DNA of 63,603 nucleotides, counting the filler, from Reticulomyxa filosa (taxonomy: Eukaryota; Protista; Foraminifera), in the NCBI GenBank assembly GCA_000512085.1. It is 17 parts of 17 records of this genome, joined end to end, with 100 filler letters (N's around TTAATTAATTAA, not from the genome) between each part and the next. Parts side by side here need not be neighbours in the genome. Positions count along the whole stretch, not along the records: positions 1 to 12,366 come from ASPP01005113.1; 16 more parts are not named here. One strand, 5' to 3'. The position numbers and the translations under genes were made by a program. Below the pieces are notes generated by a model. That model was given only the letters and a program-made list of their open reading frames with translations. It did not search any database and was not told the origin of the DNA. Shown piece after piece: positions 818 through 11,961 of this stretch. Position 1 is the first letter of the stretch; the number at the start of each line of letters is the position of its first letter.

Positions 818-2383
818 TCACGAGGCGGATGCGTTGAGAGCAGGTCTGTCCCATTGAGTGACTCCAGTTTGTTCATTGTAGTAATAAGCTTCGCCAGTGT
901 CAGTTTGGAATTCACGCCATCCAGGAGGCAGCTGTTGAAGGAGTACCAATCCCTGTTGCCGTTCTCGTCGAACCTTGAAATACTTTCCAACCACTGGCCA
1001 CCTTTCGTACCGATGCAGTTGTTCGTCACTCAATTTCAGATATGATTTGAACGTTGCCCAATCTGTACATACACACACACACATATGTATATATGTATAT
1101 GTATACATATATAAATGAAAGCCCTTTAATAAAAAAAAAAAAAAAAAACAACTAGTAACCCATGTCAGGATCTCTCCAAAAAGTAAAAGCGAGCAAGACA
1201 GTGCAAGTGCAGGTGACAACGGCCAAGGCCAAGAAGAAAAAGAACGCAGCGACACGAGTTTTGTCAGGGCCGACTTCGTCATTGATCACCACGATTTGAA
1301 CCGAGGTGGTGTTGCTCGTATTGCCAGCGATTGTGGAGGCGAGCACAGTGAAGGAAGGAGAAGAGTAAAAAGAAGAGCTGGAGGTGCACTCGTAAGGGTC
1401 AGTCAATTTGCATAGTTGGCATAATTCCAAGCCGTCCAAGTCCTCCGCGTTGCAAGCAGTGTATCGTCTCCAATTCCTTTTTGCATTCGCAATGGAAGTA
1501 GATTTGCAACAACTGCCTTTCGGAACGCCGATGCCACTTTTGTCTTCCAATGTCATTGGCTCGATGCTTGATGCATATGCATACGCGTTCCAGGTGTGAT
1601 CCCTCTCCTTCTCTTCGTCTTCTATTGTCACAAAGTCCCCGCAATTGTAAAGGGTTTCGTAGCGGTTCAATCGCCATTCCAGCACAATTGTGCACGGCTT
1701 GTCCTCGTCGCATTCGTACTCTGTTCTATACTCCACCGACACATTGTATGTTTTTCGTCTTTCCATTTTCGATGCGTCCATTCTTACACTCTTCCCTTCC
1801 ATCGTCATTTCCTTTGGAATTGCTTTTTTTATTTAAAAAAAAAATTAAAAATGGAGTGCCCTCCCCCCCCCCCCCCCTCAAAAATATATATATGTATATG
1901 TATATGATGTATGCATATACATATCTATTGTTAACTTTTTTTTTTTTTTTTTTTGTTGCATACATCAAAAATGTAGACCCCCTTTCATTGAACTCACCAA
2001 ACTCAACTTAATGGAGTCAAGTGGAAACATGCGTTCGGAGTGGTCAGCCGTTCGGAGTTTGGACATAGATACAAGTTAATCGATGAGGGCACAAAGCTTT
2101 GGAAATGAACCCAAGATATATCTATTGTCTTCAACTTTGTGTCCACCCCTTCCTTGTTGGTAATGACCCCGACACTTTGGCGCAATGTCGTTCGCACCGA
2201 CGCGTCGGGTTTGTCAAGGTCACGCCCTCCACATGGGAACTTATTCACCATACGATCCCGATGGCCCTGTCGATACGCTGAACGAGAAAGTGGTGACAGC
2301 AAGTACCCACCGCCTTCGATGGCCACTAGTCTTAGAGACAAGGACAATAAGACCAGTGTCCACAGCATACTAGTTCTCACCAT
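818..2383 (-). CDS. Type-I membrane protein: signal peptide, LPMO (AA10/AA15-like) domain without His1, Cys-rich linker, TM helix, cytoplasmic WW domain (427 aa; exons 2383-2008, 1822-1160, 1062-818)
   Basis: GT-AG introns 2007-1823 and 1159-1063 join in frame (1284 nt). Motifs: GYLLSPLSRS, FPCGG, LYLC, ACF..TPL, C....PC.IVLEW....ETLYNCGD; hydrophobic VAAFFFFLALAVVTCTCTVLLAFTFW; WW domain LPPGW...YYYN...TQWDRP. Confidence 0.8.
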
Positions 2384-2647: not shown

Positions 2648-5388
2648 ATGGGCGTAGAAGGCCTGAGCGCATATGGCCGCGTATGTCAACGGCAACTATC
2701 TTTGCCTGCGGTGAATCCAATGATGCTTCCAGACTTTAACTATCGCTATGTGTTGCTAGACGGAGCGTCCTTTGCCTGGAACTTTATGAATGGCAACTTT
2801 CATATGGATTACAAATCGATCCAAAGAGAATGTCAAGTCAAGTGTAATCTATTACATCAAAAAAGAGGAAGGGGAAGGGGAAGGGGAAAAGGGAGAAATA
2901 AAAGATAGCAGAAATGAAACATTAGGAGTTTGTAAGTCGATTCGTTCGGTGCGGATTGGAGGTAATAGTGTTTATCGACAGTAACGTGACAACTGATAAA
3001 GTAGGCACATGGCTGGGACGTCGAGCAAAGAGAATGGGACAGCTGTTCGACATGAATGGGATATTGAAGCAAAGAGCGATAACATCGTTATTCGACAGAG
3101 ACGAGACATCGTTATATTTGGACTCCGACTATTGGTTCGCACCAAACGGCTGTTTTTTTTACATTGGTCAAGTGTTTGGATCGCTAAACCATTGTCGCGT
3201 GATCTTTGCGCAAACAGATTGCGATCGAGAAATGGTCGGATATGCTAATCTGTTGGGAAACAAGTGTTACGCAATCGTGTCAAATGACAGTGACTTTTTC
3301 ATTTTCAACGTGCCTTTGTATATTCTCTTACCTTCCATTCACTTCAGTCGACAAGGCCAATCATTACATTTTTCTGGTTTTTTCCACAAAGACTTTTTAT
3401 ATCGAGTTTTGGATTTATTATATATGTATATATGCATATATACATATATACATATATACATATATGTATATATGTGTTTATATTGATCGAAACAACAGAT
3501 ACGACTACCTCAACATCAATTACCACAATTGGCTTCAATTTTGGGCTGTGATGTGGCACCACAACTGCGCGAATACGCAGATCATATACTGGATCGATGT
3601 CGTGGTCGATCCGGCGTGGACATGACGGCCAGGTATGTCCGCGAAATGCGATATCGCAAATGCAAGGATAGCAATGTGTTAAACGACTTGAAAGAGCGCT
3701 TCGCGATAGCCGACTTTTTTTACACGGCTGTGATCCCCATTGACATGTGCAATCATCCATTGCTCATTGGACTATGGATGAACAGTCTCCACGAGTACTT
3801 TGATGGCATGCCACAGCACGCCTTTGCATCTCCATTAAATGCACAAACAACAACGACAACAACGACAACAACGACAACAACGACAACAACGACAACAACA
3901 ACAACAAATACTACCACTCAGCCCATTCGACTGCTGTCTGGGGTGTTCTTTGATGCTAATTACGACGATACGAATTACTTGCCGTCGTCTCAATGGAGTA
4001 CCATTCTGTCCGCAAAGCCCATTCGGCTGCAGTTGTATCGATACATATTTATTTCCCCGCGTGTCAATGCAAACAAGCTCAATTATTCGTCATTATTGTC
4101 AGCAACAACAACAACAACAACAACAACAACAACGACGACGACGACAATGGCGTGTGACTGTTTGAGTGAACAGAGGTTTGTGGAGTCGATTCGCGAAGTT
4201 ATATGCTATCCGCAGAAGAAAAACAGAACAAATTGGAACGCCTTGTCCAGTCGCTGGGCAAAGGGGATCATAGTCGACAACATTGAAGGTGCTGCGGACA
4301 ATGCTTTGGAAGACAATCCCTTGCTGCGCATGAAGTCGTACGCGTATATTCGCAACTCGTTGCACAAATATCCGCGTCACAATATCTCCATTGCCGTCGA
4401 CATGTTATGGGAGGACATTTTGATGCTGTGGCAGTGGTTGATGGAACAGGACCAATGGCAGTCAAAGGGCGAGGAGAATGACACCAAAGAAGAGAGCAAT
4501 AGTGCCAATGCGAAAAAAAAGGAAGATAATGACAATGGCAATGAGAATAGGAAAGAACAGGATAAAGATAAGGATATGTCCTCTTCGAAACTGCTCAAGA
4601 CGTTAAAAGATCGATTGAAGTTGCAACAATTTGCTTTAATTCAACAATTGAAATATCGACATGAGTTGCTCAATCAAATCCATTATGACAATGTTGATAA
4701 AACCATTCACACTTTGGATATGCACTCACGATCCACCATTTTGCATATTTACGAAATCGTGTTCATCTTTTTGCATTTGCAGTGCTCTTTGTCTTGGTAT
4801 CCCCCTTTTCTCACCCATTTCATCCATTACGCCCATCAGCATCCACGCTCATCTGTGGGTGTCGAACAGATCAACGTCGCGAACTGCAGCGACGCAAAGG
4901 AAAGCGAGTGTGCAATGTTGTTCAAACAAGTCCCGTCCATCCTTTTAAAAAATACGTCTCAATATCAAAATACGAATGAGTGGAAGGCCACTTCAGATGC
5001 AAACTCAAAGCCACATGAAAAAGGAAAAGGAAAAAGAAAAGGAAAAGGAAAGGGAAAAGGAAAAAGAAAAAGAAACAGAATAAGCCGCAATGATCAAAAC
5101 AATCACACGCAACCATCCAAAGAAGATAGAAATGACAAAATCGTGGATTGTGCAAACCCAATATCATTAGCCAAAGAGGAAACGACAGACTCCAAAGTTG
5201 AATGCAACACCGAGTCGCAAGTGCAAACAAATTCCACTGGCTTGCCATTGTCTGACGATGATAAGTCTTGTGATAATGAAGAAAACAAAATCCACAATTT
5301 ACAGTCACAATGGCATGAACTGCAGCTTTGGAAAAAAAAAAGTCGAAGAGAGATTTGGCTCGGAGATTATTACAAAAAACAAAATTAA
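2648..5388 (+). CDS. Asteroid (ASTE1)/FAM120-like XPG/PIN-domain protein (introns 2837-2925, 3406-3498)
   Basis: MGVEGL start, LLDGAS, VFID, DCDRE (EAD position), IVSNDSDFFIF, LASILGCD (H3TH-like); both introns restore frame; poly-Thr and GK-rich tracts in the C-terminal half. Confidence 0.8.
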
Positions 5389-9727: not shown

Positions 9728-10827
9728 TTATGATCTCTCCAATCCAAAGATCTCTCTACTTCGTTCATATGTGACAAAATATAAAGTGCACCAGGCCACT
9801 TTTCTAACAATGATGGGAATGAAGCCTTTGTACAAAGCCATAACCCCTTCTTTCCGAGGGATACTAACCAATCCATGGAACATTCCCCGGTATTCATGCA
9901 CGCGGCCCGATTGATTCATTAGCCTCGTTTTGACAACATCGACAGGGGTGCTTACACAGGCACTAATGATGGCAGCACCAAAAGAGGAGTACACGGTTAG
10001 CAAAAGCCCGTCTTGATTCACCACTTTGTATGTGTGCAACAGCTCTTTTTTGATGTGATCATAAGTACCAATTTCCGCGGCGTTAATTAAAAAGGCTCTG
10101 GCAACGTTGGGACGAACCCCTGCCCAAAACCCTACAATTCCTTCTTTCTTGTATATATTCGAGATCACCACACTCATCCTTAACCGATGCAATGTTTGTG
10201 ACGCTTGCATTTGCGTCTTCAGCACATCCGTCGGGTTCATCACAAGTATACCAATGGCCCCTGCCGTACCACCAGCGATTATTCTTGTCACTAACCCTGG
10301 TTGGGCCGGTGAGCCATCTCCGTTGCCGTTATTCGACAATGAGTTCGCTATGCGAGCTATCGAGTCTCGCACCGGCTCAAAGATTACAAAGGCCAAACCC
10401 GTGTAACTCACCTTTAAATATTTGCACCCGTGACACACTTTTTTGTTTTTGTTTTTTTTTTGAGGGATAGGGAGAGAAAAAAAAAGGAGAGGCCACTAAC
10501 TTGTCTTATCAGTGCTGGTGTTAAGCCTTTAAATAACGCACTAGCTCCTTCATGTTTAGCTATTACCGTTGCTGCATTGATCATTCCAGAATATACTCTT
10601 TCTCCGGTCTGAGAAGCAACACGCTGAGCACTGTTCGCAACTGACTTTTGTGTTTGCAGCCTTGTCTTTATCACGTCCGTTGGCAGTGTACATGTTTCTG
10701 CAACTACTGAACCGCATGCACTTGCCAGCAATCGACGCATGGCTGCACCAAATGGAGTAGAATTTGGTTCGGTGGAGCCCGTGGAAGTGGGCTCGACGGC
10801 GGCTGAATCAATATTAGACTCTTCCAT
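9728..10827 (-). CDS. Mitochondrial carrier (SLC25; UCP/2-oxoglutarate-dicarboxylate-like), intron 10500-10412
   Basis: Three PxDxxKxR-type signatures (PTDVIKTRLQ, PTDVLKTQMQ, PVDVVKTRLMNQ); RQVSY, NVARAFLINAAEIGTYD, ALYKGF. Confidence 0.93.
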
Positions 10828-11961
10828 TGACACAAAAGGTTTGAGACCATGGTTTTACTCAAACTTTCCCTGTTGAAAGGGATGTTTACTGTTTGGTGCA
10901 AATGTTAACGATATTTAATTGAAAAAAGAAAAAAAATAAACAAGAAAAGAAAAAATAGACAAAAAAGAGAAAATAAAAACAATAAAAAAATAGAAAACAA
11001 AAAAAAATTTTTGAGTTTGGCATTAGCACTTTTTAATTATTTTGATAGTAATAGTAATGGAGAGACGCCAAACAACAACAAGAATCACGTTAGCGTCCCC
11101 CTTCTGTCCAAAAATATAAAAAATATAAGTTTTTGTGTTTATGCACACGTTGGTGAAAGACTGCAAGTTTTTCAACTTTGTATCAATTCGTCTTCAGTCG
11201 TGTGACGGATCAAGGTATATTATGTGGACAAGAAAGCTTGGTTTTTCCTTTTGGAATATACGTTCAATAGATCGCTAGTCTACGAAAAGGTTTGAGATAA
11301 CAAATACAACAATTAATTTGATTAATATCAACAACTGCAGTAAATAGGCTTATACATGTTGATTATATTTTCGTTGAAAGTATTCAATTTGTGGACAACA
11401 TAGTAAAATAGTAATTTAAGATTACTTTTTGTACAAGTTTACAGAAGTAATATCCAAAACAAGATTAAAGATATATATCATATAAGTATGTATAAAAGTA
11501 CTGACACAATAAAATAATACATTATGAAAATAATCGATTTTCTAAGTCAAAAATCAATATATTTAAAAACCTTTTTAAAAGTATGCTAACATTCAAGTGT
11601 CAAAATACATTTTATTTTTTTCTACAATTTTTTGTCAATTACAGACATTTTCTATAACATTGATACTTAACGTTATTAATTTTTATAATTTTTTTGTGTT
11701 TACCTTTTTTTTATTTTAATTTTGGAAAGGTTTTAGCTTTGTTTATTATATGTTTTATTCTTTTGTTGATATAACTTTTATAAATATTATTAACATTTTG
11801 ACTTGTGATAGTTTTTGATAATTACATCTTTGTGTTAATGCATGTTTTAATTTATATGTGCATATCAATTTCATTGTTTATTTTTTTACATTTTAGGATT
11901 TTCTAGGTTTTTTGAAAAAAAGTCAAGCTTCAAAGAGATGAGATTACTTTAATTATATCAT

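What the first reader, a model, noticed from the sequence alone, without database searches (positions are those of the whole stretch)
818..2383. Candidate pseudo-enzyme glycan receptor: His-brace-less LPMO-like ectodomain + TM + cytoplasmic WW domain
Seen: three exons splice in frame to 427 aa. A signal peptide (...LVAIEG) is followed by GGYLLSPLSRS...FPCGG...IDISW...INLYLC...ACF.LTPL...YNVSV...EC....PCTIVLEW....ETLYNCGDF, then a Cys-rich segment, a Ser/Thr stalk, one TM helix and a canonical WW domain at the C-terminus. Known: AA10/AA15-type lytic polysaccharide monooxygenases start with HG.L..P.SR directly after the signal peptide, end with C.LQW....E.F.NC.D, and need His1 plus a second His to bind copper; WW domains bind Pro-rich/PPxY motifs. 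Here Gly occupies the His1 position and the usual W..TA.H second His is not in register. Inference: a non-catalytic LPMO fold reused to sense chitin, cellulose or prey/substrate polysaccharide and signal through WW. I do not know of this architecture being described. The ORF track splits it into three unrelated-looking pieces.
Basis: partly seen in the sequence, partly recalled or inferred. Interest (0 to 1): 0.85.

Follow-up and report, generated by a model that had tools for sequence, protein, structure and literature searches.

The report
Copper-site-less LPMO-like membrane protein with WW tail
A three-exon gene of the foraminifer Reticulomyxa filosa encodes a surface-anchored protein whose outer domain is a distant relative of polysaccharide-cutting copper enzymes (LPMOs) but lacks both copper-binding histidines, and whose inner tail carries a WW protein-binding domain. 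This combination has not been described, and its function is untested.

Summary
On the minus strand, exons 2383-2008, 1822-1160 and 1062-818 join in frame through GT-AG introns to 427 aa. The order is signal peptide, ectodomain, Cys-rich segment, Ser/Thr stalk, one TM helix and a Pfam-significant WW domain (E 8.7e-13). The organism is Reticulomyxa filosa. NCBI's model RFI_05979 misses exon 1 but uses the same exon 2-3 junction.

The ectodomain belongs to a very small family: five R. filosa loci and one intronless marine-metagenome protein, P0003. None has His at the position matching LPMO His1 (Gly, Ile or Leu instead), and none has the second His.

Kinship to LPMOs is remote.
- Pfam, NCBIfam and HMMER find nothing.
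- Profile-profile comparison with 14 bacterial AA10 domains aligns end to end in register. The score is 37.4, against 11.1±1.8 for shuffles and about 12 for two decoy beta-sandwich families.
- Language-model neighbours are all LPMO-like.
- A structure model built with AA10 rows in its alignment matches AA15 best (Z 11.8). This result is not independent, because the model without AA10 rows was poor and matched only generic sandwiches.

No RNA evidence covers the junctions. A glycan-receptor function is plausible but untested. I rate it a new variant of a known kind, of moderate to high interest.

The parts
2008..2383 (-). Exon 1 (125 codons plus the first base of a split codon): start codon, signal peptide and the N-terminal ~100 residues of the LPMO-like domain
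   Evidence: Homologous to P0003 residues 23-107. Missing from NCBI model RFI_05979.
2312..2383 (-). Predicted signal peptide (residues 1-24, ...LVAIEG). Gly at -1 is shared by all family members
   Evidence: KD13 maximum of 2.42 at residues 10-22. The cleavage site is inferred from the (-3,-1) rule; no dedicated predictor was available.
2008..2311 (-). LPMO-like domain, N-terminal part. The mature N-terminus is GGYLLSPLSRS. It also holds FPCGG, the central strand WVHFQSF...LYLC, and NACFHL
   Evidence: hhalign and MAFFT place Gly25 on AA10 His1, and Phe (in QSF) on the second His.
1823..2007 (-). Intron 1 (185 nt, GT...AG, 30% GC, homopolymer and TA/CA repeat runs)
   Evidence: Paralogs have an intron at the same place in the domain.
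1160..1822 (-). Exon 2 (663 nt): end of the LPMO-like domain, Cys-rich segment, Ser/Thr stalk and TM helix
   Evidence: Homologous to P0003 residues 129-240.
1632..1822 (-). LPMO-like domain, C-terminal part (YNVSVEY...PCTIVLEWRLNRYETLYNCGDF)
   Evidence: Aligns with the AA10 C-terminus hvIy.WQrsD..EAFY.C.DV. For the family's C-terminal half profile (P0003 as master row) hhalign scores 26.2, against 9.7±1.7 for shuffles.
1386..1631 (-). Acidic linker and Cys-rich segment (6 Cys). The GVP(K/Q)GSCC motif is shared with P0003
1254..1385 (-). Ser/Thr-rich stalk (44 aa, 39% Ser+Thr, two N-x-S/T sites)
1176..1253 (-). Single transmembrane helix (VAAFFFFLALAVVTCTCTVLLAFTFW)
   Evidence: KD19 maximum of 2.49. 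Paralog C27496 and P0003 also end in a hydrophobic anchor.
1063..1159 (-). Intron 2 (97 nt, GT...AG, 23% GC, TA/TG repeats). An in-frame stop lies 2 codons past the donor if the intron is not spliced
   Evidence: The junction is the same as in NCBI model P0001.
818..1062 (-). Exon 3: 81-residue cytoplasmic tail (including the split Asp codon) and the stop codon
   Evidence: A 164-nt contig of one public run lies on 838-1001.
842..931 (-). WW domain (LPPGWREFQTDTGEAYYYNEQTGVTQWDRP)
   Evidence: PF00397, E 8.7e-13. Best PDB sequence matches are the WW domains of NEDD4L, Itch, WWP1, PRP40 and Pin1.

Best explanation
This is a type I membrane protein of Reticulomyxa filosa. Its ectodomain is a highly diverged member of the LPMO fold superfamily, nearest to AA15, X325 and AA10. 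It has lost the histidine brace: Gly stands at the mature N-terminus where LPMOs have His1, and Phe stands where the second His would be. It therefore most likely binds no copper at the canonical site and cuts no polysaccharide.

It belongs to a small family of surface-anchored proteins. Five loci are in R. filosa and one is in a marine eukaryote, and all lack the brace. This suggests the scaffold was kept as a non-catalytic binding or adhesion module at the cell surface.

Only this copy gained a third exon. That exon adds an 81-residue cytoplasmic tail with a WW domain, which would tie whatever the ectodomain holds to proline-rich cytoplasmic partners (cytoskeleton, endocytosis or ubiquitin-ligase adaptors).

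Shown: the gene structure, the domains, the family, the absence of the His ligands, and the profile-level similarity to AA10.
Inferred: the fold, the loss of copper binding, a glycan ligand, and coupling through WW.
For: Gene model:
- The three exons join in frame with GT-AG introns, and GC content differs sharply between exons and introns.
- The intronless homolog P0003 is collinear across the exon 1-2 junction.
- The NCBI model shares the exon 2-3 junction.

Family:
- Paralogs lie on contigs C22992, C27805, C27496 and C2142.
- The residues at the His1 position are G (window gene), G (P0003), I and L. All are preceded by Gly at -1.

Kinship to LPMOs:
- hhalign of the family against 14 AA10 domains, local mode: score 37.4, P 3e-5, probability 73%.
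- The same in global mode: 142 columns, 1-170 against 1-180, P 2.4e-7, probability 89%.
- Controls: 60 column shuffles gave 11.1±1.8 (maximum 15.5), the reversed alignment 20, PapD_N 11.6 and CopC 12.2.
- Each half of the domain aligns in register on its own.
- MAFFT finds the same register independently.
- The ESM feature neighbours of P0003 residues 23-200 are the SCE4755 polysaccharide monooxygenase family (0.91, 193 of 256 features), BIM1-like and LPMO_10.
- The AF2 model built with family and AA10 rows has pLDDT 69.7 and pTM 0.70.
- Its best structural match is TdAA15A (5msz; Z 11.8, 2.9 A over 141 residues), then LaX325 (Z 10.9) and AA10s (Z about 10). Unrelated sandwiches score about Z 6.

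WW domain: PF00397, E 8.7e-13.
Against: - No Pfam, NCBIfam or PDB sequence hit for the ectodomain, even at E 10.
- A local AA10 HMM scores the family no better than shuffled sequences.
- The AF2 model without AA10 rows was poor (pLDDT 37) and matched only generic Ig-like sandwiches. The LPMO-like model therefore depends on the alignment it was given.
- hhalign probability is 73-89%, not above 95%.
- No transcript covers either junction.
- If intron 2 is retained the protein stops 2 codons later with a short tail, as in paralog C27496. The WW fusion therefore rests on a gene model.
- No ligand or partner is known.
Confidence: 0.62

Rival explanations
1. The ectodomain is a lineage-specific beta-sandwich unrelated to LPMOs. 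On this view, the N-terminal G-G-Y-L..P..RS and C-terminal W...Y.C.D resemblances are convergence or chance.
For: - No HMM-to-sequence signal.
- The model made without AA10 sequences matches only Ig-like or FlaG-like sandwiches at Z up to 7.8.
- The family has only about Neff 2.3, so its profile is thin.
Against: - The profile-profile score is far above shuffled, reversed and two decoy-sandwich controls.
- Three separate blocks align collinearly in register, starting exactly at the predicted mature N-terminus.
- All ESM feature neighbours that carry a family are LPMO-like.
- AA15 and X325, which were absent from the alignment, are the best structural matches.
Confidence: 0.17
2. The WW exon is not part of this protein. 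The real product ends 2 codons after the exon 2 donor (...WRDPDMGY) with a short tail like its paralogs. The WW-coding stretch is then a separate small gene or a gene-model artefact.
For: - An in-frame TAG lies 2 codons past the donor.
- Paralog C27496 ends after a short cytoplasmic tail, and P0003 has no tail and no WW.
- No read spans the junction.
Against: - The 97-nt spacer looks like the family's other introns: GT-AG, 23% GC, TA/TG repeats.
- The phases match.
- The WW stretch has exon-like GC (48%).
- Its only upstream ATGs lie inside the low-complexity spacer.
- NCBI's model makes the same join.
Confidence: 0.15
3. The domain is still a metalloprotein or enzyme that uses other ligands. 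One candidate is His92 of WVHF, four residues before the column of the second His. Acidic residues could serve as well, for example for copper or another metal at the cell surface, as in X325/Bim1.
For: - X325 is among the best structural and feature matches and is also membrane-tethered (PMC10952591).
- The window protein has a His near the second-His strand.
Against: - That His is not conserved in P0003 or the paralogs.
- No member has an N-terminal His, whose amino group and side chain supply two of the three brace ligands (PMC10952591).
- The family-invariant residues are Cys, Arg, Ser, Asn, Pro, Leu, Trp, Thr and Asp, not a metal triad.
Confidence: 0.05

Closest known systems
AA15 LPMOs (TdAA15A, PDB 5msz; insect LPMO15 groups I and II)
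   Same: - Best structural match of the model (Z 11.8, 2.9 A over 141 residues).
- Eukaryotic, with a signal peptide directly before the domain.
- Insect group I carries a Cys-rich stretch after the domain, and group II a C-terminal TM span (PMC9156745). The layout domain, then Cys-rich region, then membrane anchor therefore has precedents.
   Different: - AA15s keep His1, His91 and Tyr184 and are active on chitin or cellulose. Here both His are replaced.
- No Pfam LPMO_10 match here.
- The L2 region is much shorter.
- No AA15 with a cytoplasmic WW domain came up in what I read.
AA10 LPMOs (CBP21, EfCBM33A; Pfam LPMO_10 PF03067)
   Same: - The only family compared at profile level, with an end-to-end collinear alignment.
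- Shared G2, P7, R10, central strand, the P at the end of the penultimate strand, and the W...(F/I)Y.C.D C-terminus.
- Z about 10.
   Different: - About 20% identity in the aligned columns.
- An insertion of about 37 residues in AA10 is absent here.
- His1 is replaced by G, I or L; the second His by F, L or S; the axial Phe by I or L.
- Below the detection limit of HMMER.
X325 / Bim1 LPMO-like copper proteins (LaX325, PDB 6ibh/6ibi)
   Same: - A small LPMO-fold domain with no known polysaccharide cleavage, tethered to the cell surface (PMC10952591).
- Z 10.9.
- BIM1-like_dom appears among both the feature and the shape neighbours.
- P0003's C-terminus looks like a GPI signal.
   Different: - X325 keeps the His brace plus an Asp and binds copper; this family has no brace.
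- X325 is fungal and GPI-anchored. The window protein has a TM helix and a cytoplasmic domain.
[quoted passage not shown] 2019, J Biol Chem 294:17117, cited in PMC7949027)
   Same: A precedent for an LPMO-family protein that has lost the N-terminal His and hence the copper site.
   Different: A secreted fungal AA9 that is clearly recognisable by sequence. It has no membrane anchor and no WW domain. I could not read the paper itself.
WW domains of NEDD4-family ligases, PRP40/FBP11 and Pin1
   Same: Canonical LPPGW...W..P with 22-residue Trp spacing, and significant sequence matches.
   Different: - Those are soluble cytoplasmic or nuclear proteins. Here a single WW sits on the tail of a membrane protein.
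- The residue after the conserved Asn is Glu, not the His typical of PPxY-binding WW domains (from my own knowledge). The ligand class is therefore open.

Membership tests
LPMO (CAZy AA10/AA15; Pfam LPMO_10 PF03067) | Sequence match to the family profile above its curated cut-off | tested here: not met
   No Pfam hit at E up to 10 for exon 1, exon 2 or P0003. No PF03067 match anywhere in the R. filosa genome at E up to 1. A local AA10 HMM scores no better than on shuffled sequences.
LPMO (CAZy AA10/AA15; Pfam LPMO_10 PF03067) | His as the first residue of the mature protein (amino group and imidazole bind Cu) | tested here: not met
   Gly25 in the window protein, Gly in P0003, and Ile or Leu in the paralogs. 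There is no His within reach of the predicted cleavage site.
LPMO (CAZy AA10/AA15; Pfam LPMO_10 PF03067) | Second copper-ligand His in the central strand (TA.H in AA10) | tested here: not met
   The aligned column holds Phe (window protein), Leu (P0003) or Ser (paralogs). His92 of the window protein lies 4 residues earlier and is not conserved.
LPMO (CAZy AA10/AA15; Pfam LPMO_10 PF03067) | LPMO-type beta-sandwich fold | tested here: inconclusive
   The model built with AA10 rows in the alignment has pLDDT 69.7 and Z 11.8 to AA15, 10.9 to X325 and about 10 to AA10. The model without them has pLDDT 37 and gives generic sandwich matches only.
LPMO (CAZy AA10/AA15; Pfam LPMO_10 PF03067) | Full-length collinear profile-profile similarity (remote homology) | tested here: met
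   hhalign score 37.4, P 3e-5 (local) and 2.4e-7 (global). Shuffles gave 11.1±1.8, the reversed alignment 20, and decoy families about 12.
LPMO (CAZy AA10/AA15; Pfam LPMO_10 PF03067) | Copper binding and oxidative cleavage of a polysaccharide | not testable with these tools
   Needs purified protein.
X325 / Bim1-like copper proteins (PF20238) | His brace plus Asp copper site; GPI anchor | tested here: not met
   No Pfam hit and no N-terminal His. The window protein has a TM helix. Only P0003 ends in a GPI-signal-like hydrophobic tail.
WW domain (PF00397) | Profile match above cut-off; two Trp 20-22 residues apart, followed by Pro | tested here: met
   E 8.7e-13, 48.5 bits against 26.9, profile positions 1-31 of 31. 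The sequence reads W50...W72-D-R-P75 in the exon 3 translation.
Type I single-pass membrane protein | Cleavable N-terminal signal peptide and one TM helix, with the C-terminus in the cytoplasm | tested here: inconclusive
   Hydropathy peaks are KD 2.42 (residues 10-22) and 2.49 (exon 2 residues 194-212), and exon 3 has no other peak. No SignalP or TMHMM-type tool was available, so the topology is inferred.

The most novel reading that the evidence does not exclude
The protein is a true surface receptor. Its dead LPMO scaffold recognises a crystalline or prey-derived polysaccharide (chitin, cellulose, beta-glucan) on the reticulopodial surface. Occupancy or clustering is passed on by the cytoplasmic WW domain to proline-rich cytoskeletal or endocytic partners. 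That would be a previously unknown way of wiring glycan sensing to phagocytosis or pseudopod dynamics in Rhizaria.
Probability: 0.15. Interest if true: 0.85.

Novelty: new variant of a known kind. Interest (0 to 1): 0.58.

Why it matters
LPMOs are studied almost entirely as copper enzymes. Non-catalytic descendants of the fold are few (X325/Bim1, one AA9 member), and their roles are unclear.

This is a membrane-anchored clade in a foraminifer that has lost both histidines entirely, and one copy is wired to a cytoplasmic WW domain. If the reading is right, the scaffold has been reused at the cell surface of a free-living amoeboid protist. It would also give a concrete protein on which to test what an LPMO fold does without copper.

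Two practical points follow:
- The public gene model RFI_05979 is wrong at its 5' end.
- LPMO-related proteins in Rhizaria escape Pfam-based CAZyme surveys.

Tried and rejected
- Joined model. Exons were used one by one by reference, and the intronless homolog P0003 stood in for the whole ectodomain.
I redid it by reading the alignment from files.
- Sequence searches. Pfam, NCBIfam and PDB sequence searches of the exons, P0003 and the family half-profiles gave nothing significant. The only hint was an AA10 chain (5aa7) at E 0.4 in the right register.
- Exhaustive phmmer with exon 1 gave one true homolog among 1.84 billion representatives. The other two hits (P0002, P0004) are repeat proteins matched on short stretches.
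- Word-index searches found only P0001 and P0003.
- Metagenome scans found nothing real. L003 is a bacterial oxidoreductase that shares one octapeptide by chance.
- The family N-terminal profile against 401 Pseudomonadota genomes gave noise only.
- RNA evidence. One run holds a 164-nt contig inside exon 3, and no junction is covered.
- AF2 with a 3-row alignment gave pLDDT 37. Its Foldseek and VIA-wide matches are generic sandwiches.
- Other WW loci in the genome share only the WW core and are not paralogs of the tail.
- I could not obtain AA15, X325 or SCE4755-family sequences for a direct profile comparison. A paper search for SCE4755 found nothing.
Full report
**What is there.** The window is contig C5113 of Reticulomyxa filosa. 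On the minus strand three open pieces join through GT-AG introns:
- exon 1, 2383-2008
- intron 1, 185 nt
- exon 2, 1822-1160
- intron 2, 97 nt
- exon 3, 1062-818

The phases fit (1 base + 2 bases at both junctions). Exons are 48-49% GC and the introns 30% and 23%. The introns carry the homopolymer and TA/CA/TG repeat runs that also fill the introns of the paralogs.

NCBI's model RFI_05979 (P0001, 338 aa) starts inside intron 1, translates low-complexity intron sequence and lacks exon 1. It makes the same exon 2-exon 3 join.

**Domain order.**
- Residues 1-24 have a hydrophobic core (KD 2.42). They end in ...AIEG, with Gly at -1.
- The ectodomain runs to ...YNCGDF, at exon 2 residue 63.
- An acidic linker and a 6-Cys segment follow.
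- Next is a 44-residue stalk with 39% Ser+Thr and two N-glycosylation sequons.
- One hydrophobic helix follows (KD 2.49).
- The cytoplasmic tail is 81 residues. Its last part is a canonical WW domain (PF00397, E 8.7e-13, full profile length).
- Solved WW domains of NEDD4L, Itch, WWP1, PRP40 and Pin1 match it.

**Support for the joins.** Instead, an exhaustive phmmer of exon 1 against 1.84 billion representatives gave one true relative, P0003 (287 aa, E 2.4e-7). P0003 is encoded without introns on a Tara Oceans scaffold. It is collinear with exon 1 (its residues 23-107, 34% identity) and exon 2 (its residues 129-240, 28%). The gap between the two matches is of the expected size. The exon 1-2 join is therefore supported by an independent gene.

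For the exon 2-3 join I have only the splice signals, the GC contrast, the lack of a credible separate start, and NCBI's identical junction. The one public run holding any of this sequence gives a 164-nt contig inside exon 3 and spans no junction. If intron 2 were retained, the protein would stop two codons later with a short tail.

**A small family, all without the brace.** Searching the genome with P0003 and then with the new pieces found four more loci:
- C22992
- C27805, a near copy of C22992 with in-frame stops
- C27496
- C2142, which is frameshifted

The intact-looking ones have the same layout: signal peptide, domain split by an intron at the same place, then (C27496) a TM helix and a short Cys-rich tail. 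None has a WW domain.

After a conserved Gly at -1, the first residues are GGYLLSPLSRS (window), GGFLVDPKPRS (P0003), IGYLERPHPRS and LESLELPQTRS. No member has His there.

Invariant positions in the N-terminal half are L4, R10, S11, R18, N23, P26, C27, L77, C78, C91 and L94. In the C-terminal half they are T, W, N, C and D. Those read as a structural core with about two disulfides, not a metal site.

**Is it an LPMO relative?** Sequence-to-profile methods say nothing:
- No Pfam, NCBIfam or PDB hit.
- No PF03067 match anywhere in the genome.
- An AA10 HMM I built locally scores the family no better than shuffled sequences.

To test at profile level I fetched 14 AA10 domains from bacterial genomes. 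I found them with a degenerate pattern for the CBP21 N-terminus and then a PF03067 genome search. I aligned the family with exon pieces kept as separate rows and ran hhalign.

| Comparison | Result |
|---|---|
| Family vs AA10, local | score 37.4, P 3e-5, probability 73% |
| Family vs AA10, global | 142 columns, 1-170 vs 1-180, P 2.4e-7, probability 89% |
| 60 column shuffles | 11.1±1.8, maximum 15.5 |
| Reversed alignment | 20 |
| Family vs PapD_N | 11.6 |
| Family vs CopC | 12.2 |

The two halves align separately in the correct register: 21.0 against 11.4±1.9 for the N-terminal half, and 26.2 against 9.7±1.7 for the C-terminal half. MAFFT on the mixed set gives the same register.

In that alignment:
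- The first mature residue sits on His1.
- G2, P7 and R10 are shared.
- The second His falls on Phe, Leu or Ser.
- The axial Phe falls on Ile or Leu.
- CTIVLEW....ETLYNCGDF lies on hvIy.WQrsD..EAFY.C.DV.

Independently, the language-model neighbours of P0003 residues 23-200 are all LPMO-like. They are the SCE4755 polysaccharide monooxygenase family (0.91, 193 of 256 features), BIM1-like and arthropod LPMO_10. Exon 1 alone gave only a weak lead of the same kind.

**Structure.**
- AF2 on P0003 with only the family rows gave pLDDT 37. Its matches are generic Ig-like sandwiches.
- With the family plus the 14 AA10 rows, the model reached pLDDT 69.7 and pTM 0.70.
- Foldseek's top rows for that model are LPMOs (E down to 8.6e-5).
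- VIA-align gives TdAA15A Z 11.8 (2.9 A over 141 residues), LaX325 Z 10.9, AA10s about Z 10, AA11 about 8.5, AA16 7.2, AA9 about 6.5-7, and unrelated sandwiches about Z 6.
- The ESM Atlas shape search returns LPMO_10 and BIM1-like clusters.

Because AA10 sequences were in the alignment, this is a consistency check and not an independent test. It carries some weight that AA15 and X325, which were not in the alignment, come out on top. I put the LPMO-fold kinship at about 0.8.

**How it most likely works.** Without His1 there is no amino-terminal chelate, and without the second His there is no brace (PMC10952591). Copper-dependent oxidation can be set aside unless shown otherwise. What remains is a compact sandwich held on a glycosylated stalk at the cell surface, conserved across at least two organisms and duplicated in R. 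filosa. The economical reading is a binding or adhesion module.

A polysaccharide ligand is suggested only by ancestry. The long L2 loop that forms much of the AA10 binding face is missing here.

The WW domain would bind proline-rich cytoplasmic proteins. It has YYYNE where PPxY-type WW domains usually have N-H (my own knowledge), so I leave the ligand class open. Only one of the five loci has this tail. That fits a recent exon gain better than an ancestral receptor design.

**Comparison with what is known.** Insect AA15s already show 'domain + Cys-rich stretch' (group I) and 'domain + C-terminal TM' (group II), but with intact catalytic sites (PMC9156745). X325/Bim1 are surface-tethered LPMO-like copper binders that keep the brace (PMC10952591). 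An AA9 member without the brace has been described (Frandsen et al. 2019, cited in PMC7949027; the paper is not held). I found no paper linking Reticulomyxa with LPMOs or with WW domains.

The finding is therefore a new, very divergent, brace-less and membrane-anchored branch of a known fold superfamily, with one WW fusion that I could not find described.

**Verdict.** Interest is 0.58.

Noticed in passing
window 1726-1968 and 2008-2383 (-): NCBI model RFI_05979 (338 aa) begins with a translation of intron 1 (MYATKKKKKKV...) and omits exon 1. The public protein therefore lacks the signal peptide and two thirds of the ectodomain.
   Followed up: yes
L006 (C22992) 1321-2259; L008 (C27805) 222-1205: Two near-identical copies of a paralog (exon 2 100% identical at protein level). 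The C27805 copy has TAG and TAA stops in exon 1, so it is a pseudogene, an allele or an assembly error. C22992 is cut by the contig end after the domain.
   Followed up: partly
L009 (C27496) 737-1731; L010 (C2142) 27-1071: A second pair of paralogs (54% identical to C22992). C27496 is intact, with a third exon that encodes a TM helix and a Cys-rich 20-residue tail. C2142 is frameshifted in exon 2.
   Followed up: partly
L002 2548-3411: The only non-Reticulomyxa relative (P0003) is intronless and AT-rich. It ends in a ~30-residue hydrophobic stretch with no cytoplasmic tail, which looks like a GPI signal. It lies on a Tara Oceans scaffold beside genes with PIG-L and DUF4336 domains. The organism is unknown.
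   Followed up: no
window 9728-10833 (-): A mitochondrial carrier gene in two ORF pieces (PF00153, E 1.1e-45 and 1.3e-18).
   Followed up: partly
window 3529-5388 (+): A 619-aa ORF with two long poly-Thr tracts and Lys/Gly-rich repeats. It has no Pfam match above cut-off.
   Followed up: no
window 1063-1159, 1823-2007; L006 1672-1919: The introns of this gene family are filled with TA/CA/TG microsatellite-like runs and long A, T or G homopolymers (23-30% GC, against 48-49% in exons). This contrast is a handy exon/intron marker in this genome.
   Followed up: partly
L075 (C26546) 156-389: Another R. filosa WW domain, 55% identical in the core to the one here. It sits in a small ORF with no TM segment in that ORF, so it is not a paralog of the tail.
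   Followed up: partly
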